From positions 151,871-215,870 of IMG/VR virus record IMGVR_UViG_3300018891_000001: DNA of 64,000 bases; one strand, given 5' to 3'. Both the position numbers and the translations under genes were made by a program. How positions within the stretch are numbered: the stretch's first letter is position 1; each line of letters opens with the position of its first letter. The notes beneath the pieces are model-generated. The model made no database searches and was not told the origin of the DNA. It was given only the letters and a program-made list of their open reading frames with translations. Below are positions 2,007-32,862 of this stretch, in pieces.

Positions 2007-2107
2007 AAAAGTTTCACCTCCATTGTCATAAGACGGGCTACACCTCTCTATATATATAATACACAACTGTAATGCATTTCATACGACAAAAACGGAGGAA
2101 TACAAAA

Positions 2108-3920: not shown

Positions 3921-6204
3921 ACGACTCTTTCAACCTAGTTTAATTCAAAACGAAAAAGACGTATCTTATCATTTGCCTTCTTTATCACGAGCAGAAGCAA
4001 AAGCCCTTCTCTCCGCTCCCTTAGCGGGGGGAGGGGTCTTTGGCCTAGAAGCCCACCAAACAAAAGACCATGAAAGTCTTATTTTTTTTGCTCCGCCTTA
4101 CTATAAAGTGGAATGGAACCTCGCAGACCGAGACGCTGTTTTTGAAAATCTTGAAACCTATAAAAAACAAATCACCATCATGCAACTATATACGAGTAAA
4201 TCCTCATTGTTTCCTCTCTCCATTGAATATACTCAGTCTTTTTGGGAACAGGTTCGGCAATTTGCAGCTGATGATATCGGAATTATTTATCAAATTGTAC
4301 TTGCATACCGACAAGACCGATGGAAAGAACGAATCAAGGAGCAATATCAACTGTATCTAAGTGGAATCCAATCTCCCGCTGATCAAAAATGGGTACGCAG
4401 TATTCAAAATCGAATTAATCACTCCTTAGATCATCTCTTGCAATGGGAGTTCAAATATGCCCCTATTCCTGAAGTGGAACAGAAACTAAAAGAAAATGGA
4501 TTTCGATATAGTATTCGGCTCATTCTTTATGGCGGTAATCGAGCGAGGCGAAGAAAACTAATACATGAAATACAACAAATTTTACGAACCATGGAGTATA
4601 TCAATGAATGGAAAGTGAATACCTTTTTTGCGTTTGACGATATTATTCAGAATATCCAAAAACGCAAGCTCGATAATGTAGGAAAGCAACAAGTCTTATG
4701 TGTATCCGAATTGCTGCCATTTCTGATGTCCGAACATGTAGTGTACATTGAAAAACCGGCCATAAAAAAGGTAACAAAAACAAAGGTAAAAAATCCATTC
4801 GATCTCCTGCCGATAGGCAAGAAAATTCAACAAGTCGATGGGAGTCAAATAGCTCAAAAATTTGTTTACGCTCTCCAAGAGTTAAAGGTAATTAAAGAAG
4901 AAATTGTTGCTAAACGAGTTCAATGTGGGCCAATCATGATGAAAATCACCTTTGATTTACCGAAGGGGATGCGTCTTTCGGATATAACAAAGAAAAATAT
5001 GATTGAGGATATTCAGACTCATATGGGAGTCAAACATCTACAGATCTTACAAGGGGAGGATACGGGAGAATTCGATATTATGTTGCCACAAGAAAAAAGG
5101 CAAAAAATCTTTTTACGAGATTATGTGGATACCTCTGAATTTATGGAGTTTGCCGGACAACATCCACTTCCATTCTTTGTAGGGGTGGACGAAATAGGAC
5201 GCTCCATTTTTCGTTGTCTAAGTGAAATTCGTCATATTCTTGTAGCAGGAACAACCGGATCCGGCAAAAGCGTGTGGATGAATCAACTTATTCTTACCTT
5301 GTTATTAATTCGCAAACCCGATGAACTTCAATTTTATATGATTGATCTAAAACAAGTGGAACTCACCTGCTTTCAAGATTTCCCTCATGTGCGAGAAGTC
5401 ATCACAGATGCGAACAAAGCTATTCACCTACTTAGGAAAATCCAAAAAGAGATGGACAGACGTTATCAATTATTTAGTGAAACAGGAGTAAAAAACATTG
5501 CCTTGTATAATAGAAAACATCCTCATCAAAAGCTCCCTTATATTGTGTGCATTATTGATGAATATGCGGAATTAGCATTACGAACGGATAGTATACATGA
5601 ACTCGTTCAAAGTATGGCACAACTCGCAAGGGCTGCTGGCATCCACTTGATTATTGCAACCCAAGATCCACGAGTTGAAGTAATCCCAGGAATTATTAAG
5701 TCCAACATGCCGGGGAAAATCGGTTTCCGTTGCTCTAATGGAAACAGTTATCTAACATTTTTAAATACGAAACCACCTTTTAACCTATTAGGAAACGGGG
5801 ATGGGGTCATGAGCTTTGAGGGGCAAATAGAGGAGCATATTCGCTTTCAGGGATGTCTGATTATCGATGATCCCAAAAACGAAGGGCTTGAAAGTCAGTT
5901 GATTGCACAAATCGCAAGTCATATGGACGACTATGAAGGAGTAGATTTACCAGAATTAGAGGAAACAGAAGAAGTGCATATAGAAGAAACAGAGACAGAA
6001 ATAGACCGACTTAAACGCATTATTGCTCAAACAGGGGAAACAAGGGTATCACAACTAAGGGAAATGATGAAAATTAACATCAATCGATTGAATGATTTGA
6101 TGAGGGAACTCGCAGAAGAAGGGTGGCTGCAAAAGCCAGAATCCAAACAGCAAGGATACCAATTAATTGCACCAGAAGAGGAATTGGAAAAGTGGAGACA
6201 ATAA
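3898..6204 (+). CDS. FtsK/SpoIIIE-family DNA translocase
   Basis: HILVAGTTGSGKS, MIDLKQVEL, IIDEYAEL, ARAAGIHLIIATQ, LLGNGDG; C-terminal gamma-like winged helix. Confidence 0.92.
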   Translation: MVPLGNFKRLFQPSLIQNEKDVSYHLPSLSRAEAKALLSAPLAGGGVFGLEAHQTKDHESLIFFAPPYYKVEWNLADRDAVFENLETYKKQITIMQLYTSKSSLFPLSIEYTQSFWEQVRQFAADDIGIIYQIVLAYRQDRWKERIKEQYQLYLSGIQSPADQKWVRSIQNRINHSLDHLLQWEFKYAPIPEVEQKLKENGFRYSIRLILYGGNRARRRKLIHEIQQILRTMEYINEWKVNTFFAFDDIIQNIQKRKLDNVGKQQVLCVSELLPFLMSEHVVYIEKPAIKKVTKTKVKNPFDLLPIGKKIQQVDGSQIAQKFVYALQELKVIKEEIVAKRVQCGPIMMKITFDLPKGMRLSDITKKNMIEDIQTHMGVKHLQILQGEDTGEFDIMLPQEKRQKIFLRDYVDTSEFMEFAGQHPLPFFVGVDEIGRSIFRCLSEIRHILVAGTTGSGKSVWMNQLILTLLLIRKPDELQFYMIDLKQVELTCFQDFPHVREVITDANKAIHLLRKIQKEMDRRYQLFSETGVKNIALYNRKHPHQKLPYIVCIIDEYAELALRTDSIHELVQSMAQLARAAGIHLIIATQDPRVEVIPGIIKSNMPGKIGFRCSNGNSYLTFLNTKPPFNLLGNGDGVMSFEGQIEEHIRFQGCLIIDDPKNEGLESQLIAQIASHMDDYEGVDLPELEETEEVHIEETETEIDRLKRIIAQTGETRVSQLREMMKININRLNDLMRELAEEGWLQKPESKQQGYQLIAPEEELEKWRQ

Positions 6205-19441: not shown

Positions 19442-21883
19442 TTATAAAGCAAAGAGGTCTAGCTCCTGTTGCCCCTCAATAACTTGCTTCCGCTTTGGTA
19501 CACCCTTATTGTATTCTCTAACGTTTTCTACTTTCTTGATGACAGAATCAAACATGGATAAATAATCGTCAATGGCTTTACGAGTCCGACGAACATCTTC
19601 TTTTGTTGCACGACCGACCTTTGCTTCTTCTTCTACAAAGCGAATCAATCCTTGAGCAATCTTACGTACTGTATCAATACCGCCTTCAATTGGATTCATG
19701 ATATAACCTTCATAATCCTGAAACTCCACAGCTTGCATTTCCTCAAAGGACTGATTTTTGCGGGCAAAGATATCATGTACCGTTTCAATATCTTCAAAGA
19801 CATTATCATTAAGGAGCTGTTTGGCTAATGCATTCATGCCGTCAGAACTATCTGCCATGGCACGCAATCCTTCTTCAGAGAATTTTCCTTGCATAGCCAT
19901 AGCTGCATCAATTTTGCGAGCAATATGTTTGAGAGCTTTCTCTTGAATCGTATCACGATACACATAGGTGTATACTTTTACATCTTTCGTTTGTTTGAGT
20001 CGCCATGAACGACGAGAGGCCTGCATGTAATCATATGTGGAATAATCCAATTGGAAAAAGTGGATATTTGGAAAAGCAAGTAAATCTAATCCAACTTTCA
20101 CCAATCGTGGATTGGTAATAAGAATGTCCCAATCGTGTTTCTCCATCATTCCATGAAGCCATTGTTCCCGTTGTTGAGAATTCTTTGGCATTCGAATCCC
20201 GTCATAGCTTCCACCATTTCGAAGAATTCCTACATTATAACCTCGACGTTTGAATTCTTCATACAAGTAAATATCCACTTGATTCCATGCTTCTTTTCCG
20301 GTGTATTTGACATAAATCAGATTCTTGCGACCATGCTGATAAATTTCATCATCAATAATGCGGATCAATTGTTCTACTTTTCTTGGCACAAAATTTACTG
20401 GATCAAAAGTACGAGGAACTCCAAGAATATGACGATGTCCATCTTTATCATATGTGACAATTTCTTCTACATTAAATGGTGTATCCGCATACTGATACAT
20501 GGCATTGATAAAGGTAGAAATACTATTCATGCCACCTAACCCTTCTGTTGAACGCATGGTTACGGCGACATCATGTGCAATTTGTCGATAAGCATCATGG
20601 TGTTCAGAACTCATATCTACCACTACCGGGATTTCTCGATATGGCGGTAATGCATATCCCATGTCATTTAGTTCTAAGAAGGCACAATTATTCATCAGAT
20701 GCATCGGGAATAAATGTGGTGAAATACCTGGTTTTTGTGAAGTCGTACGACGAATGCGACCATCTCGTGCACGAGTACTTCGCTCATTAATTCCATATCG
20801 ACGATTAAAGAGTGATTCATCTTGATACGTAATGCCTTCCCGAAGAAGTCCTTTTGGATTTAAGCGAGCTAGTAAATAAAAAATATCTCGAGCCATTCCA
20901 CCCATTAATGTCCCCGTTAGCAAAATTTGTTTTTCAGTATGGTTCACTAATTGGCCAAATGCAGTACCTGTTGTAGAATCTCCACTTTTGTACTCATGAA
21001 CTTCATCAGCAATTAGGTATTTAAAGAATCCTCTTGGTAATTTCTTATTGATATACCAAGCTGGAGATACTTTTCGATATCCAGAATCCAGTGGAAGTTT
21101 TTCTGGCTGCCATAATACATATCCGCATTCTTGTTCCTCATCTGCCGGCACCCAACGATTACTATTGTAATCCAACTTCCATTCCTTAATTTCCTCTTTT
21201 GGTAAAAGAGAAGTTGGAACTTTGTTTCGGCAGCGATAATTTTCTTTGGTCATATTCTTTACCCAGTTCTTTGATGACTTGTTGTAAGTTTCAAAGAAAT
21301 GTTCTTCTGCATATTCACCGCCACGTTCGAATAATGGATTCCCACACTTTGGACAATAAAAACTGGTTTCGCCTACCGAATAAAACACATCAGGTCTTCC
21401 GCTCTCATAATTCCAGACTTCGTTTCGAATCATGCGAACACGATACTCAGGATGAACAACTTGATGCATGCCATCTCCTCGTCGAACATGTCGAATTTGT
21501 TCAGGTTCTACGTCCTCTACAGAACGGAATGTAATATCAGATTTATGAACACGCCAATCTTTGATAGGCTCCATCGGATAAGTAAACTTGGACAACTCAG
21601 AGCTCATGATGTAATATTCCCATTTCTCCGGTTTCTTGTATTTTATTTTTCCTTTTGCATCCATGTATTGGTTTTGTTCCTGGATTCGTTTTACGTCTAA
21701 CCAATGTTGAATAATATGTGTTTCTACATTCGGTATTCGTTCTTTAATTTCCCGTGCCCATTTTTCTACCATAATGGAAGGACACAGGACAATAACCCGC
21801 TGTGGTTGAGGATTGGTTTCTACGTTTTGCAGCATTGCTTCTGTGATGTATGGAACTACTTCACCCATTGTGGTTTTACCTGT
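19442..21883 (-). CDS. SF2 (SNF2-like) helicase, exon 2
   Basis: Begins TGKTT after the intron; DEVH, LLTGT, GLDL, QASRRSWR. Confidence 0.85.
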   Translation of the reverse strand, partial: TGKTTMGEVVPYITEAMLQNVETNPQPQRVIVLCPSIMVEKWAREIKERIPNVETHIIQHWLDVKRIQEQNQYMDAKGKIKYKKPEKWEYYIMSSELSKFTYPMEPIKDWRVHKSDITFRSVEDVEPEQIRHVRRGDGMHQVVHPEYRVRMIRNEVWNYESGRPDVFYSVGETSFYCPKCGNPLFERGGEYAEEHFFETYNKSSKNWVKNMTKENYRCRNKVPTSLLPKEEIKEWKLDYNSNRWVPADEEQECGYVLWQPEKLPLDSGYRKVSPAWYINKKLPRGFFKYLIADEVHEYKSGDSTTGTAFGQLVNHTEKQILLTGTLMGGMARDIFYLLARLNPKGLLREGITYQDESLFNRRYGINERSTRARDGRIRRTTSQKPGISPHLFPMHLMNNCAFLELNDMGYALPPYREIPVVVDMSSEHHDAYRQIAHDVAVTMRSTEGLGGMNSISTFINAMYQYADTPFNVEEIVTYDKDGHRHILGVPRTFDPVNFVPRKVEQLIRIIDDEIYQHGRKNLIYVKYTGKEAWNQVDIYLYEEFKRRGYNVGILRNGGSYDGIRMPKNSQQREQWLHGMMEKHDWDILITNPRLVKVGLDLLAFPNIHFFQLDYSTYDYMQASRRSWRLKQTKDVKVYTYVYRDTIQEKALKHIARKIDAAMAMQGKFSEEGLRAMADSSDGMNALAKQLLNDNVFEDIETVHDIFARKNQSFEEMQAVEFQDYEGYIMNPIEGGIDTVRKIAQGLIRFVEEEAKVGRATKEDVRRTRKAIDDYLSMFDSVIKKVENVREYNKGVPKRKQVIEGQQELDLFAL

Positions 21884-22979
21884 CGATACCTTCTAGGTCG
21901 GGAATTTAACCCAACCACTCCCCTTTCGGAGAGGACGAGACTATATCATCACTCAGGCTCGGAGACAGCCTTCATCGTGTCGGGCGCTCGTGTCGGGTTT
22001 ATTGGTCGGCATCCTCACCCGTTAGTCGTTGAACCTTCCTAGCTACTCAAGTGCCATTCGCTAGGCTTGGCTGCTGATTGCCATATCCTTTCGGACTTAG
22101 GTTTCCAGCAATTCACCCGATTTTACATGGGCTACAGGATAATGTTTTCGTTCCAGATAAATCGTTGCATTGTTGTAGAGGAAATTTACAAATTTCGCAT
22201 ACAATCCATTTCCACCGAATCGATAACCAAATGCTCTTCCATTCTCTTTGTATTTTTCTCTTAGTGGCAATCCGTGTTCATGTAGAACTTTGGAATAAGC
22301 ATCTAGGAATTCTTTTGTACCAATCACTTCTATATTCACTTGAGGTCTGGAATTATCTCTCGGATCATAGAAGTAATGAATGCTTCCATCTCCATCGAAA
22401 TATCCTCTCATAAAATGATGCAATAAATGATGTGGCACTTGCTCTTCTGTTGGGAATTGCAAGGTCAATGATTTGGCAGGCGTACAGCCTTTATCAATTA
22501 AATCCTGTACAATTTCCATCGATACGAGTTGTAATCGATAGCATAGATGACCATTCACGTTTCTTGGTTTGATGTCCATTTCAGGAGAGATAAAATCTCG
22601 AAATCGCTCAAGATGATTAACATCTTTTTCAGATAAGCTTAGTTCCAATGTTCCCCGTGGTTCATAAACTGAGCCATCGGCATATAAGAAGCCTAACCAA
22701 TATGCTTTTTCCTCGGTATCGATTACTTTAAACGCATCGGTGTTGTGATTGTATTTACTTCTTCCTGTTGTCATCCCTCTGGATTTTATCTGTATCCCAT
22801 CTGCTTTTAACATTTGGGATAATTTCTTGCGGTCAAAACCTGTGAGCTCTGAAATCTTTCTCAACGATTTACCTTCCAAAAACATTTGCTTTGCCATTTC
22901 ATACATGTTATCACTCCCATAGGTATATTTCCTATACCCATAATAACATGCTATGAAATGCATTACGACCTGTTTGTTA
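21884..22979 (-). ncRNA. Group I intron (1096 nt) in the helicase Walker A motif
   Basis: 5' exon ends in U, intron ends in G; P GAATTGCTGGAAAC, Q AATCAGCAG, R TTCAACGACTA, S ATGATATAGTC; IGS GCCCAU and P10 CCUGU. Confidence 0.92.
22097..22906 (-). CDS. Intron-encoded LAGLIDADG homing endonuclease with N-terminal HTH
   Basis: YWLGFLYADGS and FMRGYFDGDGS; GGGAG SD before ATG 22906. Confidence 0.9.
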   Translation of the reverse strand: MYEMAKQMFLEGKSLRKISELTGFDRKKLSQMLKADGIQIKSRGMTTGRSKYNHNTDAFKVIDTEEKAYWLGFLYADGSVYEPRGTLELSLSEKDVNHLERFRDFISPEMDIKPRNVNGHLCYRLQLVSMEIVQDLIDKGCTPAKSLTLQFPTEEQVPHHLLHHFMRGYFDGDGSIHYFYDPRDNSRPQVNIEVIGTKEFLDAYSKVLHEHGLPLREKYKENGRAFGYRFGGNGLYAKFVNFLYNNATIYLERKHYPVAHVKSGELLET

Positions 22980-23993
22980 ACCCATTTCTCCAACGATAAA
23001 ACAAAAATCATCTTCCACCAATGTTTTAGAAACACCCATAACAGTATTGGCTTGCGGTGGATATAGACCTGTAATTCCTTGCTGATTGGCACATAAATTC
23101 ACATCACGAAAAGCGGGATGATGTCGTTCTTTCTCCGGATCAAAACGAACAGCAATATTCTCTTGGATACGTTTTCCTAGCTCTGGTGCAAAGTGAGTTA
23201 AATAATCATCAATCGTCTGACAATGAGGTAATATGGATTGACTTTCATCTCGGCCATCTTCTTCAATTGCAAAGTTTAACTCATATCCTTGAACTCCTTC
23301 TGAGATAATGTTTTCTAGCTGTTCTTCTGTAATCATAAGAAGTCCTGCTTCTAGAGAATAATTGGAACCAAAACACTTCACGGTAAGAGGTGTATAATAA
23401 CCTTCCTCTTCTAGTCGTTCGACAATATAATCAGTCCATTCCTCTAGCATTGGTGTATTATATCGGTCATTCAGAACATGAAACACTTGTTTTTTGTAAT
23501 TACCATCCCATGCCAAAATGAGTTCAGCTAAATGGCTTGGAATAGATTCTGGATCTAGACCTTGATTGATTCGTTCTCTTTGTTCTGCTAACCATTGATT
23601 ACGTGCTTTTAAATCTGGTTTTGCATTTTTGGCCACCATCAAAATATGAGTTAAATCATCAACTTTTAATACCTCTTCATCATACGGCTTTTTAGACGTA
23701 GGAATAGCAAAAACACTATGACGAATAAATCCTGTTTCGTATCGATTTCCTTCAGCACGATAAATTTGTCCCGTTTTTCCATCTTGCATAAGCCATGCGG
23801 CTTGCTTTACTTTGGAATCCACACCAATCAAATTGGCTAAATAGATGACATTATCGCTATCTGTCACAAGTAGATCACAATAGGCTATGCCGCTTGAAGA
23901 ATGACGGTTATACATTTCTAATGTATATATTTCCGGCATATAAAGGCGTGGCATTTCTTTCACCTCTTTGTTTGTATTTTTTAGGCTTCCCAT
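22980..23993 (-). CDS. SF2 helicase, exon 1 (ends FIVGEMG)
   Basis: LYPPQ Q-motif-like sequence; joins TGKT in frame after splicing. Confidence 0.85.
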
Positions 23994-24165: not shown

Positions 24166-25551
24166 CTACATGATTTTTCGGAATTGTCCTTTGGCATCTA
24201 AGATTTTTACGCCAATATTGTAAAATTCTCGTTCTACAACTTTGGTTAAGCCATCATCATCGGTTTCTGTAAATTCACGAACATCTTTAATGGCACTTCC
24301 TTTTACAAGATGCTGATCGGGTCCAGTGCCAATATATCCATTCAAAAATCCGGATGTGAGTAATAACATGATATGTCCTTTATGAAGTGGAGATGGTGTC
24401 ACAGGATTATAGTTATTAAAAACTTGAGAATTCTTCTCTTGATATACTTGCAATAACTTGGATTTTTGAAGGGATAATAAAGCTTCGCTTCCCGTAACCG
24501 GACCTACTCGGAATGATTGAATTTCATCTGGATGACAAGCCGGAACCTCATAAATAGGCTCCAATTGTGGTTCAATTACTCCATACATAGCATCCACTTT
24601 AGCTCGGAAGACTTGCTTTTCATATTGTTCATGTCCTTCAGGAACTGTAATTTCACGAATCTTTCCAAAAGACTTATAAGGTCGTTCTTTGGTTCGAGCA
24701 ATGGCCTTTCCTAATTCATAATGTTCTCGAGTCGCTTTCTTTCGTTTTTTGGCTAAGATAATGCATTTTCGATATTCAAGATATTCATCATCATCCAAAC
24801 GGAGGATTCTAATATCTTCGTACTGATTCACCAATTTAAAAGCAATCGTATCGTCAATAAATTCTTTTGGAGTAATCATGATTAAAATACCACCTGGGCG
24901 CAGGTATGTAGTTGCTCGTTGCAGCAGAAACGCATCCCATCGCATGCTAGACATTTTCTTTTGTTGCTCTTTCATGGCCATGCGCCATGCTTTCACACGT
25001 TTTTCTAATTCGGCACGAATTTTTCTTTCAATCCGCTCTTGACGCTGCTCTTCTGTTTCTTGGTCTTTCCGTTCGGTGTTATCTTCATTTAGTGCGCCAA
25101 AATCAATTTGCTTAGAAATTTGAGCTTGCAGTCGCTTCTTTTCTTCTTCTTGACGCAAGACTTGTTCTCGAATTTCTTTTTCAAAATTTGGCATATTATA
25201 TGGATCAATCTGCTCAAACACTTCATGAATCAATCGATCATCAACATAAGGATGAACCACCATAAGAGAGAAAACATCATTGGTGATCTTAGCTTCAGAG
25301 CGATAATCGGATTGGGAAACACGATAATAGGAATAAGTGTTTCTCATAGAATCACAATCCGCTGGTAATTCATCTACTCCATATAAAAAACGTTGGTCAT
25401 GTTTTGAAGTTAACTGATGAAGAAAAGACCCATTGAAAGCTCTCCAGTCCATAGCAGTAATAGGTTGACCTTCCGGAAATTTTAAATACATTTGCAGCAA
25501 TTTGGTTGTATATTGACTAAGCGGATGATTAATTTTCCATGGTTGTGACAT
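24166..25551 (-). CDS. Degenerate class I methyltransferase-like (DUF6094-type) protein paired with the helicase
   Basis: LYGVD, VHPY in place of NPPY, LRPGGILIMITP, PLHKGH..LLLTSG.LNG...HLVKG. Confidence 0.6.
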   Translation of the reverse strand: MSQPWKINHPLSQYTTKLLQMYLKFPEGQPITAMDWRAFNGSFLHQLTSKHDQRFLYGVDELPADCDSMRNTYSYYRVSQSDYRSEAKITNDVFSLMVVHPYVDDRLIHEVFEQIDPYNMPNFEKEIREQVLRQEEEKKRLQAQISKQIDFGALNEDNTERKDQETEEQRQERIERKIRAELEKRVKAWRMAMKEQQKKMSSMRWDAFLLQRATTYLRPGGILIMITPKEFIDDTIAFKLVNQYEDIRILRLDDDEYLEYRKCIILAKKRKKATREHYELGKAIARTKERPYKSFGKIREITVPEGHEQYEKQVFRAKVDAMYGVIEPQLEPIYEVPACHPDEIQSFRVGPVTGSEALLSLQKSKLLQVYQEKNSQVFNNYNPVTPSPLHKGHIMLLLTSGFLNGYIGTGPDQHLVKGSAIKDVREFTETDDDGLTKVVEREFYNIGVKILDAKGQFRKIM

Positions 25552-29314: not shown

Positions 29315-30300
29315 TTACTTTTCTAAATGCAATACATATTTCACTAAGTCGCTAATCTCTTTTGAAACCTTTTCACGAAATTCTGTTCGACCCAATGCTA
29401 ATGCATGGTTAGGACGATTAATATAATCATCAATGGTATCAATAATCAATTGATGCATAAACCGAATTCGATTCGGATCCAACTCATATTGTTTGACGGT
29501 TTGATTTAGTTGCATACGAGTTTCATCCAATTCTTGCTCCAAACGCTGAACCTTTTGTTGCATGCGATTTCGATCATCAATTAAATGTTGAATTAATTCT
29601 TTATTCTGTACAGTGGATAATTGTTCAGATAAATCTTTAAGATATACAACTGTTTGATGAATGGTTTCATTCATAACAGATAAAATTTCTCGATCTTCAT
29701 GTCGCAGCAATTCTTGAGCATCATGAACTTGGTTAGCCTGTTGCAAGAAACGTTCAATTTTTTCATCTAATGTTAGTTCTTTAACTTGAATTGGTTCTTC
29801 AATTTTGTTTTTTGTTAATGAAAATCCTGCATCTATAGAATGAATCTCTTTAGAAGAAATATCTTCGTTCTTATTCTCCTCTCTTGTTTCTATTTCTTCT
29901 GCCACCGTCTGATTTCCTTTTTCCTCTTTTTTGTCTTTCTTGATATGTTTTTCCAAAAACTCACGAAATCTTTCTGCACTTTCTGGTGTAAATGTATCAT
30001 GAAGTTCAATTTTTGGTTTTTCTTTCTTTTCTTTTATGTTTTCTGTTATATGTTCGTGCGCCTGATGTGGAAGACGATAAATTTTCCGTTTATATCTTCC
30101 TCGCTTTGGAGACAGTGAAAGATATCCTTCTTCGACTAATTTATTAAGATGATAATCCATTGTTGGTGCTTGTACGCCAAATTGATCTGCTAAATCTGAA
30201 GAAGAAATCTCTACTTCTCTTTCTGGGCTTTGTTCAATCATTTTGACAATTTCTCTATAAATTTGTTCTCGATTTACCTTTCGAAATGGCATGGCCACCA
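29315..30300 (-). CDS. Winged-helix plus coiled-coil protein
   Basis: SSDLADQFGVQAPTMDYHLNKLVEEGYL. Confidence 0.65.
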
Positions 30301-30399
30301 TGTAATATGCATCTCCTTTTTTCATTAGCTTCTCACATCTATAATACCATAATATCCAAGAAAAAAATAAAAAATGCAAGAAACTTAATGAATTTTTAT

Positions 30400-31596
30400 T
30401 TAAGAAAAAGAAATTACGGTAGATTCTACCACTTCAGAAGGCAATTCGTCTAAAAATCGAGAAGGTTTATAGATACGAGATTTTCCGTCTTGTTGTGATC
30501 TTTGTTCTGCCCATGTGATCAATAATTCTTTTTCTGCACGGGTAATACCAACATAAGCCAAACGACGTTCTTCTTCGATATCTTTTTCACTTTGACTTCT
30601 CCAAGAAGGAAATATGCCTTCATTCCAACCGATGAGAAATACTACTGGGAATTCTAATCCTTTTGAAGCATGCATCGTCATCAAACGAACAGAGTCTGTT
30701 TTCTTATTGTTTTCAGAATCTGTCACTAATGAAATGTCTTGTAAGAAATCTTCTAAGGTTTTATCTGGATTTTCTGTTTCATATTTATCGACAAGAATAA
30801 GAAACTCTTTTAGATTGTCAATTTTCTCATCTGCTTTCTTGTCGTTTTCATAATACGCCCAAAGACCTGATTGTTCTAATACATAACGAACATAAGTGGA
30901 CATTAGTAAGCCGCTTTCTAATTTCTTTTCAAAGTGATCGAGCAAATCGATAAATGCTGTAATTTTGCTAAGTGAACGTTTATTGATACTTGGAATGTCA
31001 CTAGCATTTTTTAAAGCTCGATACACACTGACTTTATGAATATGTGCGTATTCTTCAATTTTATCTTGAGAGGTCTTACCAATTCCACGAGATGGCTTAT
31101 TCAGAATACGCAAAATAGCTGTATCATCTTTTCGATTAAAAATCGATCTTAGATACGCAATGGCATCTTTAATCTCTTCCCGATCATAAAAACCGTGACC
31201 ACCAATGACTTGATATGGAATAAATTGATTACGGAAGAAGTCTTCAATGACTCGAGACTGGGCATTTCCACGATATAAAATGGCAAAATCCTCATATTTG
31301 TATCCATCTTGAAGAACCTTCTTTTTAATCATGGCTGCAATATAAGCGGCTTCTTGATATTCATTTCCACAACCAATGACTTTAATGGTTTCTCCTGGCT
31401 CTCTTGGTGTTCGTAATGTCTTTTCTTTTTGGTGTTTATTGTATTTTACTATTTCATTTCCTGCATGAACAATATTGCGAACAGAACGATAATTTTGTTC
31501 TAGTTTCACAACAGTAGCTTGTGGAAAATACCGCTCAAAATTCAGAATAATATTAATATCAGAACCACGGAAACCATAAATGGCTTGATAATCGTC
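30400..31596 (-). CDS. pcrA: PcrA/UvrD helicase, exon 2
   Basis: DDYQAIYGFRG, LEQNYRS, MTMHASKGLEF, EERRLAYVGITRA. Confidence 0.93.
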   Translation of the reverse strand, partial: DDYQAIYGFRGSDINIILNFERYFPQATVVKLEQNYRSVRNIVHAGNEIVKYNKHQKEKTLRTPREPGETIKVIGCGNEYQEAAYIAAMIKKKVLQDGYKYEDFAILYRGNAQSRVIEDFFRNQFIPYQVIGGHGFYDREEIKDAIAYLRSIFNRKDDTAILRILNKPSRGIGKTSQDKIEEYAHIHKVSVYRALKNASDIPSINKRSLSKITAFIDLLDHFEKKLESGLLMSTYVRYVLEQSGLWAYYENDKKADEKIDNLKEFLILVDKYETENPDKTLEDFLQDISLVTDSENNKKTDSVRLMTMHASKGLEFPVVFLIGWNEGIFPSWRSQSEKDIEEERRLAYVGITRAEKELLITWAEQRSQQDGKSRIYKPSRFLDELPSEVVESTVISFS

Positions 31597-32079
31597 CGTA
31601 AATCTTGGAATTTCATCGCATATACACTTTGACCATAATTACCAACTACATTGTAATAACCATAACAGGCTATTACAGGAAGGAAGTTGATAAATATGGG
31701 TTGGTTATCCACCAAACAAGAAGCAATGAAACGCCATTACATTGCGGTATGGCGGTAAACAACAGGTAAAGCGCATCTTTGAATACATATACAAGGATGT
31801 AACCATTTACCTTCAAAGGAAATACGAGAAATTCTCTCTGCTATTCTCATAGCAGACGAGACCATATCTTCACTCTCTTTCAAGAGGTCCGGCGCTTCGG
31901 TTGTAGGAGTTTCACCTGCACCCTACTCCCTTTCGGGATGGTCGTTACACCTTCCTCATATGAGGCTTGGCACGGGATTGTCTCTCGTTACCGAGTCACT
32001 TCCCCCGTTAGCAACGTGTCCTTCTCACGTCACACCCTGCAAGTACAGGTTCACCGGATTTAACGTGAGCTAACAATTA
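31597..32079 (-). ncRNA. Group I intron (483 nt) in PcrA motif III
   Basis: VVG|DDYQ restored on splicing; P1 GUGGGU/GCUCAC; AACGGGGGAA, AATCCCGTG, P7 GACCA/TGGTC; terminal G. Confidence 0.9.
31730..31852 (+). pseudogene. Relic C-terminus of a LAGLIDADG endonuclease, antisense within intron 2
   Basis: LRYGGKQQVKRIFEYIYKDVTIYLQRKYEKF resembles the intron-1 HEG end YRFGG...FLYNNATIYLERK. Confidence 0.7.
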
Positions 32080-32862
32080 ACCCACGACAAACAAATTGTA
32101 TTGCGGCGCAGCAAGTAATAATAATAATTGAAATTGTGCATAGTTGGCATCTTGATACTCATCACTCATGACATATTGAAATTTTCCTTGCCAATAATCA
32201 CGAGCTTCCGGATAATCACGAAGCAAAATCACTGTATTCATAATGAGATCGCCAAAATCCATTGCGTTCATTTGCTTCATTTGGAATTGATAATGCATAT
32301 ACACTTGTGCCATGACTTGCTCATCAGCTGTTTCAGCTACGTGGTATGTACAGTATTCTGGATCCCATAGATTGTTTTTGGCATTATCTATATAGCTGAG
32401 TGCATACCCAGGCTTGTATTTGTCTTGAATCCCCATTTGCTTATAAATACGCTCAATGACTTGCAAAACATCGCCTGTATCATAAATAACAAACTTGCAT
32501 CGTTTGTTTTTTTCATCTTGCTCATATCCTAATAAATGACCGTGTTTGCGTAAAATGCGTACACATAAGCTATGAAATGTACCCATCCAAATGTGCTTCA
32601 TCGGTTCTTCGCCCACTACTTTTTCTAAACGTTCTTTCATTTCCCGAGCAGCTTTATTGGTAAATGTAGCACAAAAGATATTTTTTGCTTGAATTCCTTG
32701 CGATAGCATATTAGCAATTCGAACTGTTAAGGTTTTTGTTTTACCGGACCCGGCTCCCGCTAAAACAAGAACCTGACCATTAATCGTCGTAGCCGCTTCT
32801 CGTTGTTCTGGATTAAGTTCATTAAGCATATTTGATACTTCCCATAAATTTAATGTAGACAT
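32080..32862 (-). CDS. pcrA: PcrA/UvrD helicase, exon 1
   Basis: LNPEQ, AGAGSGKT, TFTNKAAREM, GTFHS, DEYQD. Confidence 0.93.

What the first reader, a model, noticed from the sequence alone, without database searches (positions are those of the whole stretch)
21884..22979. Group I intron splits the helicase Walker A; its endonuclease sits in the P1 loop and overlaps the ribozyme core
Seen: splicing joins GEMG|TGKT into a ~1150-aa SF2 helicase. The IGS GCCCAU (22127-22132) that pairs with exon AUGGGU lies ~850 nt from the 5' splice site, next to P10 CCUGU (22134-38), which pairs with exon-2 ACAGG. The LAGLIDADG ORF therefore fills loop L1 and its last codons encode the IGS and part of the core. 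Inference: an uncommon host gene and insertion position, with HEG translation competing with splicing.
Basis: partly seen in the sequence, partly recalled or inferred. Interest (0 to 1): 0.65.

Follow-up and report, generated by a model that had tools for sequence, protein, structure and literature searches.

The report
Mobile group I intron in phage helicase
A self-splicing group I intron carrying its own LAGLIDADG homing endonuclease interrupts the ATP-binding loop of a large SNF2-type helicase gene in a 216-kb phage; the endonuclease gene sits inside the first stem-loop of the ribozyme and runs on into its core, a rare but known kind of arrangement.

Summary
Window 22979..21884 (minus strand) is a 1096-nt group I intron (Rfam RF00028, 97.5 bits, full length). 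Removing it joins GEMG|TGKT into an 1151-aa SNF2-type helicase, and an uninterrupted homologue (84% identical) reads VGEMGTGKT. The guide CCUGU-A-GCCCAU (22138..22127) is unique in the intron and lies 6 nt before P3. It pairs with exon 1 AUGGGU (U•G at the splice site) and exon 2 ACAGG.

Six related introns at the same site settle the reading. Three lack the ORF and place the guide 3, 25 or 70 nt from the splice site. Three carry the same endonuclease between the P1 strands. In one relative P10 covaries (UCUGG/CCAGA).

The 269-aa double-motif LAGLIDADG ORF (22906..22097) reads through the guide, P3 and P4 and stops on the UAA of the P5 tetraloop receptor. Its relatives stop in the guide, at J3/4 or beyond P5, a natural series of "core creep". 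A conserved hairpin sequesters the ORF's start.

Splicing, cleavage and translation/splicing interference are untested, because no RNA data exist. Verdict: a real, well-formed new member of a known kind, of moderate interest.

The parts
22980..23993 (-). Exon 1 of the helicase gene (338 codons, ends ...VGEMG; last six bases AUGGGU form the exon strand of P1)
   Evidence: ORF list; junction; no Pfam or PHROG hit of its own; collinear with residues 1-~333 of the uninterrupted homologue P0002
19442..21883 (-). Exon 2 (813 codons plus stop; begins TGKTT; SNF2-related helicase core with a Cys-rich insertion)
   Evidence: Pfam SNF2-rel_dom 37 bits (cut-off 24.9), ResIII and Helicase_C below cut-off; phrog_62 DNA helicase 1.4e-30; 574 homologues
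21884..22979 (-). Group I intron, 1096 nt; first codon UAA is in frame with exon 1; last base G (omega G) at 21884
   Evidence: boundaries fixed by P0002 and by six introns at the same site
22978..22985 (-). P1, 5' strand: exon AUGGGU plus intron UA
   Evidence: Pairs with UAGCCCAU at 22134..22127; base-pair probability 0.90-0.999 for seven of the eight pairs and 0.34 for the eighth, in an unconstrained fold of the 1126-nt precursor
22969..22972 (-). P1 extension, 5' strand (intron nt 8-11, CAGG); mimics the start of exon 2 and pairs with the P10 part of the guide before step 1
   Evidence: Base-pair probability 0.97-0.985; in L011 the corresponding UGG pairs with CCA of its changed guide
22127..22138 (-). 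Internal guide: CCUGU (P10, pairs exon 2 ACAGG), A, GCCCAU (P1, pairs exon 1 AUGGGU with G.U at the splice site)
   Evidence: Unique in the intron and rare in shuffles; same sequence next to the splice site in ORF-less L008; P10 covaries in L011; G-U variants in L010 and L014
22097..22906 (-). Homing endonuclease ORF, 269 aa plus stop: N-terminal helix-turn-helix region and two LAGLIDADG motifs (YWLGFLYADGS, MRGYFDGDGS); fills L1 and ends in P5
   Evidence: Pfam LAGLIDADG_3 29.1 bits (cut-off 22.5); phrog_4645 1.8e-59; 3978 homologues; invariant D77, D171, D173
22885..22968 (-). Leader hairpin of the endonuclease mRNA; buries the AUG and codons 2-5. RBS GGGAG lies at 22918..22914, 7 nt before the AUG
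   Evidence: MFE -32.6 kcal/mol, z -5.27, 0 of 200 shuffles as good; consensus fold kept in four ORF-bearing introns, 3 pairs with compensatory change
22953..22967 (-). 15-mer CGTAATGCATTTCAT, a copy of a genome-wide promoter- or operator-like motif; forms the 5' strand of the leader hairpin
   Evidence: 13 copies with up to 2 mismatches in 216 kb (about 0.4 expected), mostly 15-30 nt before the RBS of ordinary genes; identical 15-mer in the DnaE intron
22072..22120 (-). P3 5' strand (22120..22114), J3/4, P4 5' strand (22110..22105), J4/5, P5 with 11-nt-type receptor CCUAAG/UAUGG and GAAA-capped P5a (22101..22081), P4 3' strand (22077..22072). The endonuclease stop UAA (22099..22097) is the UAA of the receptor
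   Evidence: Rfam alignment; RNAalifold with compensatory changes in P3 and P4; coordinates; naming it a receptor rests on my own knowledge
21939..22071 (-). P6 (22071..22033), P7 5' strand GACUA (22027..22023), extra hairpin between P7 and P3' (22021..21994), P3 3' strand (21986..21980), P8 (21979..21950), J8/7 and P7 3' strand UAGUC (21943..21939)
21884..21933 (-). P9 with GAAA loop (21933..21918), P9.1 (21916..21896), 3' tail ending in omega G (21884)

Best explanation
This is a mobile group I intron inserted in motif I (Walker A, GEMG|TGKT) of the large SNF2-type helicase gene of a 216-kb phage. The helicase gene lies in the phage's replication-gene region.

Ribozyme. It is compact, about 255 nt (guide, P3-P9.1), and has no P2. 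Its P1 helix forms between the last six exon bases plus the first intron bases and a guide 842-853 nt downstream. The roughly 830-nt L1 loop holds a LAGLIDADG homing endonuclease gene.

Splicing (inferred from the standard group I mechanism). Guanosine attacks after the U of the U.G pair in P1. The CCUGU part of the guide first pairs with intron nt 8-11. It then pairs with exon 2 (P10) to align it for ligation. The omega G at 21884 ends the intron.

Exon 1 translation. The intron's first codon, UAA, stops ribosomes coming from exon 1.

The endonuclease ORF. Its conserved domain ends at ...YLERK. A further 15 codons follow; the last 14 of them, plus the stop codon, are read from the guide, P3, P4 and P5, ending on the UAA of the P5 receptor. 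A ribosome finishing the ORF would therefore unfold P1/P10, P3 and P4. In read-through precursor RNA the ORF's AUG is buried in a conserved hairpin. The 5' strand of that hairpin is a copy of a phage promoter- or operator-like motif. I infer that endonuclease translation is separated in time or by transcript from splicing, as for I-TevI in the T4 td intron.

Evolution. Relatives with the intron and ORF, with the intron alone (two keep ORF remnants), and with no intron show the gain-and-loss cycle expected of homing.
For: Ribozyme: RF00028 at 97.5 bits, full length. RNAalifold on four orthologous cores recovers P3, P4, P6, P8, P9 and P9.1, and 19 of 46 pairs have compensatory changes.

Junction: the spliced ORF is open. 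Uninterrupted P0002 (84% identical) reads VGEMGTGKT, and its DNA (L012, near 3973) matches our joined exons.

Guide: it is unique in the intron, and the strict form occurs in 0.0002 of shuffles. The long-range P1 has base-pair probability 0.90-0.999 for seven of its eight pairs (0.34 for A2-U846) and is in the MFE structure of the whole precursor. ORF-less L008 has the same P1 strands around a 15-nt loop, and L010 has a 5-nt loop with guide GCUCAU. L011 has exon 2 UCUGG paired with guide CCAGA, where ours is ACAGG/CCUGU.

Endonuclease: Pfam and PHROG hits, and the catalytic Asp of both motifs is invariant. The same ORF sits in the same place in L013, L014 and L015.

Overlap: 42 nt in ours and L015, 27 nt in L014, 7 nt in L013. 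Protein tails after YLERK vary. The overlap stretch is 95.6% identical between ours and L015, against 69% for the ORF body.

Leader hairpin: z -5.27, conserved in four introns. Motif.

Precedent for translational control where an ORF enters the core: PMC3984707 and PMC3073962.
Against: No RNA evidence exists. The only runs holding this DNA are four biocrust metagenome DNA runs from one study, probably the source of the record, and their contigs show only the intron-containing form. Self-splicing, endonuclease activity, the internal promoter and ribosome interference are all untested. The leader hairpin is supported mostly by sequence conservation (3 compensatory pairs). The first ~75 nt of the Rfam match are probably forced onto coding sequence, so 97.5 bits slightly overstates the core match. 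Subgroup assignment could not be made with the tools at hand.
Confidence: 0.88

Rival explanations
1. The ribozyme is no longer active. The helicase gene is then a pseudogene or is made as two polypeptides, and the endonuclease persists as a selfish gene between them, like the endonuclease-split genes of some T4-like phages.
For: No spliced RNA has been seen. Gene callers in public data annotate exon 2 as a separate 808-aa protein starting at the Met five codons after the junction.
Against: The Rfam match is full length at nearly twice the gathering score. All core helices, the U.G pair, omega G, P10 and the in-frame UAA are intact. Helices are kept by compensatory changes among orthologues whose ORFs have diverged to 65-74% identity. 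The break lies inside GxGKT, which cannot work as two chains. Both exons stay open and collinear with uninterrupted homologues.
Confidence: 0.05
2. P1 forms with a nearer sequence, for example ACCUAU at intron nt 55-60. The endonuclease gene would then lie in a P2-type or other peripheral loop rather than in L1, as the 5' hairpins in the Rfam alignment suggest.
For: The Rfam model places two 5' hairpins (its positions 1-45) at 22212..~22150, upstream of the proposed guide. ACCUAU could pair with AUGGGU.
Against: ACCUAU gives U-A rather than U.G at the splice site, has no P10 partner, and is used in the conserved leader hairpin. ORF-less relatives put GCCCAU or GCUCAU 9-76 nt from the splice site and 6 nt before P3, with nothing between. 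P10 covaries with this guide. The whole-precursor fold picks the distal guide. The Rfam 5' hairpins lie in sequence conserved at the protein level (...FLYxDATIYLERK).
Confidence: 0.03
3. The LAGLIDADG protein now serves mainly or also as a maturase that helps the long-range P1 and the core to fold, rather than only as a homing nuclease. This is not exclusive of the main explanation.
For: LAGLIDADG proteins with maturase activity are known, including one in a bacterial 23S rRNA intron (PMC3984707). An 830-nt L1 and the lack of P2 might make folding harder. The ORF is kept intact in four diverged introns.
Against: Both catalytic Asp residues are invariant. ORF-less relatives with otherwise similar cores exist, so the ribozyme does not need the protein in general. 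Presence/absence polymorphism at one site fits homing.
Confidence: 0.12

Closest known systems
Phage T4 td intron with I-TevI
   Same: Both are phage group I introns in a DNA-metabolism gene. In both, the 3' end of the endonuclease ORF runs into core helices, a hairpin sequesters the endonuclease translation start, and ribosomes in the core impair splicing (PMC3073962, PMC3984707, citing Gibb and Edgell 2010). Both have an in-frame stop early in the intron.
   Different: I-TevI is a GIY-YIG enzyme in the P6 loop, and it overlaps P6a/P7 by 20 nt. Here a LAGLIDADG enzyme lies in L1 and overlaps the guide (P10/P1), P3, P4 and P5 by 42 nt. Here there is no P2. Regulation here is predicted only.
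Nuclear rDNA group I introns with endonuclease genes in P1 (myxomycete introns such as Ppo.L1925 with I-PpoI)
   Same: The endonuclease gene sits in a peripheral extension of P1, so P1 pairing spans the ORF. P1 is one of the recorded positions (P1, P2, P6, P8, P9; PMC3679873). That I-PpoI specifically lies in P1 is from my own memory.
   Different: Those are eukaryotic rRNA-gene introns of subgroups IC1/IE with His-Cys box enzymes and pol I expression problems. This one is in a phage protein-coding gene with coupled transcription and translation.
Group I introns of Bacillus phages and prophages (B. cereus-group nrdE/nrdF introns with I-BthII; Bastillevirinae introns)
   Same: The host range is Bacillota. 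The cores look IA-like, with an extra hairpin between P7 and P3'. Endonuclease genes lie in loops, they target conserved motifs of replication or nucleotide-metabolism genes, and one genome can carry several introns (PMC2248736, PMC11878797).
   Different: Those carry mostly HNH or GIY-YIG genes in P6-P9 loops. LAGLIDADG was found once among 45 Bastillevirinae introns. No helicase host gene is mentioned in that survey (term search).
'Core creep' model of ORF/ribozyme overlap (Edgell, Chalamcharla, Belfort 2011)
   Same: The model predicts variable extension lengths and dispensable tails. Here orthologous introns at one site end the ORF in the guide (7 nt), at J3/4 (27 nt), in P5 (42 nt) or beyond it (the P0130 tail). 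The protein family's conservation stops at YLERK.
   Different: The model names stop-codon mutation. Here one step looks like a 1-nt length change between YLERK and the guide, which moves the guide's UAG out of frame. The direction of change was not established.

Membership tests
Group I self-splicing intron (Rfam RF00028) | Conserved core P3-P9 with the P7 guanosine-binding helix and J8/7 | tested here: met
   97.5 bits against a gathering score of 50, model positions 1-253; P3, P4, P6, P8 and P9 recovered by RNAalifold, 19 of 46 pairs compensatory
Group I self-splicing intron (Rfam RF00028) | P1 between the exon end and an internal guide, with U.G at the 5' splice site | tested here: met
   AUGGGU/GCCCAU, U(-1).G848; base-pair probability 0.996; unique site; same guide in six orthologous introns
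Group I self-splicing intron (Rfam RF00028) | Terminal G (omega G) and P10 pairing with exon 2 | tested here: met
   G at 21884. P10 is ACAGG/CCUGU. In L011 it is UCUGG/CCAGA (two compensatory changes). In L014 it is ACGGG/CCUGA, with 4 of 5 paired including U.G
Group I self-splicing intron (Rfam RF00028) | Exon ligation restores a functional reading frame | tested here: met
   1151-aa open frame; the junction equals the uninterrupted P0002
Group I self-splicing intron (Rfam RF00028) | Guanosine-dependent self-splicing; spliced RNA in vivo | not testable with these tools
   No RNA run holds the locus; only DNA contigs do
Subgroup IA group I introns | Extra helices P7.1/P7.2 between P7 and P3' | tested here: inconclusive
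   A conserved hairpin region lies between P7 5' and P3' (columns 158-187), but no subgroup-specific models were available. There is no P2, and the P5 receptor/L9 GAAA pair recalls IC3 ribozymes (own knowledge)
LAGLIDADG homing endonuclease, double-motif monomer | Two LAGLIDADG motifs, each with the catalytic acidic residue | tested here: met
   LAGLIDADG_3 at 29.1 bits, above the 22.5 cut-off; D77 and D171/D173 invariant in 14 homologues
LAGLIDADG homing endonuclease, double-motif monomer | Site-specific cleavage of the intron-less allele, and homing | not testable with these tools
   Indirect only: intron-plus-ORF, intron-only (two with ORF remnants) and intron-less alleles exist at one site among relatives
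SNF2/SF2 helicase (host gene) | Motif I GxGKT plus SNF2-type ATPase core and C-terminal helicase lobe | tested here: met
   GEMGTGKT is restored by splicing. SNF2-rel_dom scores 37 bits, above the 24.9 cut-off. Helicase_C at 18.2 bits is below its cut-off. phrog_62 DNA helicase scores 1.4e-30
td/I-TevI-type control of an ORF that enters the core | Translation start sequestered in precursor RNA, and an intron-internal promoter giving a translatable transcript | tested here: inconclusive
   The hairpin is predicted (z -5.27) and conserved. The promoter- or operator-like motif is over-represented upstream of genes, but no transcript ends are known

The most novel reading that the evidence does not exclude
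The endonuclease ORF is read through the guide itself, so its translation and the formation of P1/P10 are mutually exclusive. The AUG-burying hairpin is built from a phage promoter/operator motif. Under this reading the intron acts as a timed switch. Transcripts read through from the helicase promoter splice and give helicase. Transcripts started at, or released by a regulator of, the internal motif give endonuclease and cannot splice. The set of orthologous introns with ORF ends at four different core positions would then be a natural experimental series for the 'core creep' model, showing how much ribosome entry a ribozyme tolerates.
Probability: 0.25. Interest if true: 0.55.

Novelty: new member of a known kind. 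Interest (0 to 1): 0.38.

Why it matters
The finding adds a clear, comparatively supported case of a phage group I intron whose homing endonuclease gene lies in L1 and reads through the internal guide and three core strands. Such overlap is known, but overlap with the substrate-recognition element is the most direct conflict possible between translation and splicing.

Four ORF-bearing and three ORF-less introns sit at one site, and their ORF ends fall at different core positions. Together they give a ready-made series for testing the 'core creep' idea and the cost of ribosome entry.

It also flags an uncultured family of roughly 200-228-kb Bacillota phage-like elements that are rich in introns in replication genes. 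For genome annotation, it shows that the '808-aa helicase' entries in public data are exon 2 of an 1150-aa protein.

Tried and rejected
- Megablast of the gene against the phage collection found nothing. tblastn found only 23-32% identical matches in unannotated gut phage records, so no named relative exists.
- The search for sequencing runs gave four DNA runs from one biocrust study and no RNA. Laying them showed one contig per run, identical to the window, with no joints. This is neither support for nor evidence against splicing, and it is not independent of the record.
- PDB sequence search with the endonuclease gave no meaningful hit.
- The sigma-70 promoter scan found no more sites than shuffles, and none before the endonuclease ORF.
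- The two 5' hairpins of the Rfam alignment were considered as P1/P2 and rejected. They lie upstream of the guide in protein-conserved coding sequence.
- The proximal P1 candidate ACCUAU was rejected (see rivals).
- An internal AUGGGU at intron nt 39-44 could act as a decoy for the guide. It is not conserved in L014 or L015, so I attach no weight to it.
- For the DnaE intron of the same genome I could not find a P1 with U.G at the junction that Pfam supports (GAU|CUC). Its P1 is left unresolved.
- No structure prediction, complex prediction or large protein search was run, because the family assignments were already clear.

Full report
**Observation**

Everything lies on the minus strand. Exon 1 (23993..22980) ends ...GAA AUG GGU. 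The next 1096 bases (22979..21884) begin UAACAAACAGG and end GGUAUCG. Exon 2 (21883..19442) begins ACAGGUAAAACC. Joining the exons gives an open frame of 1151 codons that reads FIVGEMG|TGKTTMG across the junction.

A scan of the intron for any hexamer able to pair with AUGGGU with G opposite the last U found four sites. Only one has a P10 partner within 3 nt. The exact form CCUGU-N(0-3)-GCCCAU occurred in 0.0002 of 20,000 shuffles.

**It is a group I intron**

The Rfam model RF00028 matches 22212..21917 on the minus strand at 97.5 bits (gathering score 50), E 6e-24, over model positions 1-253. Downstream of the guide the elements follow in order:
- a 6-nt joiner
- P3 (UCGGGUG/CGCCCGA)
- P4
- P5, with CCUAAG/UAUGG flanking a GAAA-capped P5a
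- P6
- the P7 5' strand
- an extra hairpin
- the P3 3' strand
- P8
- J8/7 and the P7 3' strand (GAUAUAGUC)
- P9, with a GAAA loop
- P9.1
- a 12-nt tail ending in G

There is no P2. I read CCUAAG/UAUGG as an 11-nt-type tetraloop receptor for the L9 GAAA loop; that reading is from my own knowledge and was not tested.

**The junction is right**

A word search with exon 2 found 574 relatives. The closest uninterrupted one is P0002 (1142 aa, 84% identical, on a 216-kb metagenomic contig). It reads FLVGEMGTGKTAQG. Its DNA at L012, near position 3973, is collinear with our two exons placed end to end. The intron therefore sits inside motif I (GxGKT) of an SNF2-related helicase. Supporting hits are Pfam SNF2-rel_dom at 37 bits and phrog_62 'DNA helicase' at 1.4e-30.

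**Comparative test of the P1 and L1 claim**

Several relatives in the list are 750-830 aa and start at the Met just after the junction. I fetched four of their contigs, plus three contigs that carry the closest endonuclease homologues. This gave six full introns at exactly this site and one 3' fragment.

Three of the introns have no ORF:
- L008 (424 nt) begins UAACAAACAG, has a 15-nt loop, and then has the same CCUGUAGCCCAUGUAAAA followed by P3.
- L010 (331 nt) has a 5-nt loop and the guide GCUCAU.
- L011 (382 nt) has an L1 loop of about 60 nt.

Three introns (L013, L014, L015; 1073-1133 nt) carry an endonuclease 65-74% identical to ours between the same two strands.

So the ORF is an insertion in L1, and the guide is the sequence 6 nt before P3.

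P10 covaries. Ours, L008, L013 and L015 pair ACAGG with CCUGU. L011 pairs UCUGG with CCAGA. L014 pairs ACGGG with CCUGA, with 4 of 5 positions paired including one U.G. L010 has no evident P10.

Intron nt 8-11 (CAGG) can pair with the same CCUG before the first step. L011 has UGG opposite its CCA at the matching place.

An unconstrained partition-function fold of the whole 1126-nt precursor puts the long-range P1 in the MFE structure. Base-pair probabilities are 0.90-0.999 for seven of the eight P1 pairs (0.34 for A2-U846) and about 0.97-0.985 for the extension.

RNAalifold on the four most similar cores recovers P3, P4, P6, the extra hairpin, P8, P9 and P9.1. Compensatory changes occur in 19 of 46 pairs, for example G-C to A-U in P3 and three pairs exchanged in P4.

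**The endonuclease**

The ORF starts at ATG 22906, with GGGAG 7 nt upstream, and stops at 22099-22097, giving 269 aa. It matches Pfam LAGLIDADG_3 above its cut-off and phrog_4645 at 1.8e-59. It has about 4000 relatives, mostly unnamed, from Bacillota-type contigs.

An alignment of 14 relatives keeps both motifs invariant (AYWLGFxYAD and RGYxDGDG). Conservation ends at ...YLERK, and the tails after that vary from a few to about 18 residues. The N-terminal 45 residues resemble the helix-turn-helix domains that Pfam finds in longer relatives.

**The overlap**

The guide starts in frame 0 of the ORF. The last 14 codons (YPVAHVKSGELLET) plus the stop codon are read from the guide, the joiner, the P3 and P4 5' strands, J4/5 and the first bases of P5. 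The stop is the UAA of CCUAAG. The overlap is 42 nt.

However, the first ~75 nt of the Rfam match (22212..~22139) are coding sequence upstream of the guide, inside L1, and are not core.

The relatives differ in where the ORF ends:
- L015 has the same 42 nt.
- L014 stops at a UAA that forms J3/4 (27 nt).
- L013 has one base fewer between YLERK and the guide, so the UAG inside CCUG-UAG-CCC is in frame (7 nt).
- The tail of P0130 (...PVAHVKPGELLEPLT) runs beyond P5.

This is the pattern predicted by the 'core creep' proposal of Edgell, Chalamcharla and Belfort (PMC3073962, section 7): variable extension and a dispensable tail.

Between ours and L015, the 45 nt from the guide onward are 95.6% identical. 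The ORF body is 69% identical and the rest of the ribozyme 71%.

L008's loop (GAAAGAAAGCUACU) and L011's L1 retain the last codons of the ORF, so the ORF-less forms are deletion derivatives.

**Expression signals (predicted)**

The first intron codon is UAA in frame with exon 1, in ours and in all six full-length relatives.

Intron nt 12-95 fold into a hairpin of -32.6 kcal/mol (z -5.27). In it, UGCAUUUCAUA pairs with the AUG and codons 2-5, and the RBS sits in an internal loop. The fold is kept in all four ORF-bearing introns.

The 5' strand of the hairpin is part of the 15-mer CGTAATGCATTTCAT. The identical 15-mer lies at the matching place in another endonuclease-bearing intron of this genome. 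The motif, with up to 2 mismatches and sometimes in the palindromic form ...GCATTACAT, occurs 13 times in 216 kb where about 0.4 is expected. Most copies lie 15-30 nt before the RBS of ordinary genes.

I infer that this is a phage promoter or operator, and that endonuclease synthesis is kept apart from splicing. That is the arrangement described for I-TevI (PMC3073962, PMC3984707). None of this has been measured.

**Context**

The window is the last 64 kb of an IMG/VR virus record of 215,870 bp with direct terminal repeats, rated complete. Nearby genes encode a primase, a replication initiator, a UvrD-like helicase, a thymidylate synthase-like protein, a clamp and clamp loader-like proteins, and an FtsK-like protein.

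The genome has seven RF00028 matches, four above the cut-off, and four paralogous LAGLIDADG genes.

Related helicases lie on 195-228-kb contigs from Priestia, Bacillus, Oceanobacillus, Paenibacillus (one labelled plasmid) and Alicyclobacillus assemblies. No cultured phage in the collection is close.

**Not shown**

No RNA run holds the locus. Four DNA runs of one biocrust study hold it, probably as the source of the record, and show only the intron-bearing form. Self-splicing, cleavage, the internal promoter and ribosome interference remain to be tested.

**Comparison and verdict**

The element works like the T4 td/I-TevI system: a phage intron whose ORF enters the core, with a sequestered translation start. 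It differs in enzyme family, in the position of the ORF (L1, a position recorded for nuclear rDNA introns, PMC3679873) and in what is overlapped (the guide itself). LAGLIDADG genes are the less usual family in phage introns (PMC3984707, PMC11878797). I found no paper describing an intron in a phage SNF2 helicase, but that search covers only open-access text.

This is a new member of a known kind.

Noticed in passing
window 31838..32089 (-) = G000 183708-183959; flanks 32862..32077 and 31509..30400: A second, weaker group I match (37 bits, below the cut-off) lies between two ORFs that are the N-terminal (UvrD-helicase, profile 1-246 of 271) and C-terminal (UvrD_C, 2-350 of 350) halves of one UvrD/PcrA-like helicase. 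It is probably another intron. No endonuclease paralogue was found in it.
   Followed up: partly
G000 143691..~145003 (+) (locus L003) and 145674-145941 (L004): The Pol III alpha (DnaE-like) gene carries two group I matches. The first splits PF07733 exactly between profile positions 103 and 104, at the PD|LDID catalytic motif. It has a paralogous LAGLIDADG ORF (143767-144717) between the 5' splice site and the core, ending in a P2-like hairpin, which is the same layout as the helicase intron. I could not draw its P1 with a U.G pair.
   Followed up: partly
G000 30259-31656 (+) and 65124-66289 (+) (loci L002, L005, L007): There are two more endonuclease-bearing group I elements. In one the LAGLIDADG ORF follows the core match. 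In the other it lies between two partial core matches. One 216-kb genome therefore holds the same endonuclease family at three different positions in ribozymes.
   Followed up: no
window 2068..2082 (+) and G000 20414, 22362, 88001, 97286, 108815, 140901, 149127: The motif [T/C]GTAATGCATT[T/A]CAT is repeated 13 times with up to 2 mismatches, usually just before an RBS and sometimes as a perfect palindrome. It is a likely phage promoter or operator; the regulator is unknown.
   Followed up: partly
L008 3876-3954 (+): An ORF-less intron at the same helicase site in a relative contains a full-length match to the skipping-rope RNA motif (RF02924, 49.4 bits against a gathering score of 36.7) in its 3' peripheral region. 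This motif of unknown function may here be a peripheral domain of a group I intron.
   Followed up: no
L008 3572-3586; L011 ~1010-1064: The L1 loops of ORF-less introns keep the last codons of the endonuclease gene (ERKLLL-stop in L008; ...ATIYL.RK-like in L011), a direct trace of ORF loss.
   Followed up: yes
window 24166..25551 (-): The gene just upstream of the helicase has a weak DUF6094 (uncharacterised methyltransferase) match. It is its conserved neighbour in all the relatives I fetched. The helicase's 330-aa N-terminal region has no family match.
   Followed up: no
public protein sets (P0001, P0007, P0012, P0017, P0023, P0031, P0040, P0054): Exon 2 of this helicase is annotated as a stand-alone protein of about 750-830 aa in many records, including an NCBI Alicyclobacillus entry. 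Most begin at the Met after the Walker A junction, so the intron site is widely occupied and mis-annotated.
   Followed up: partly
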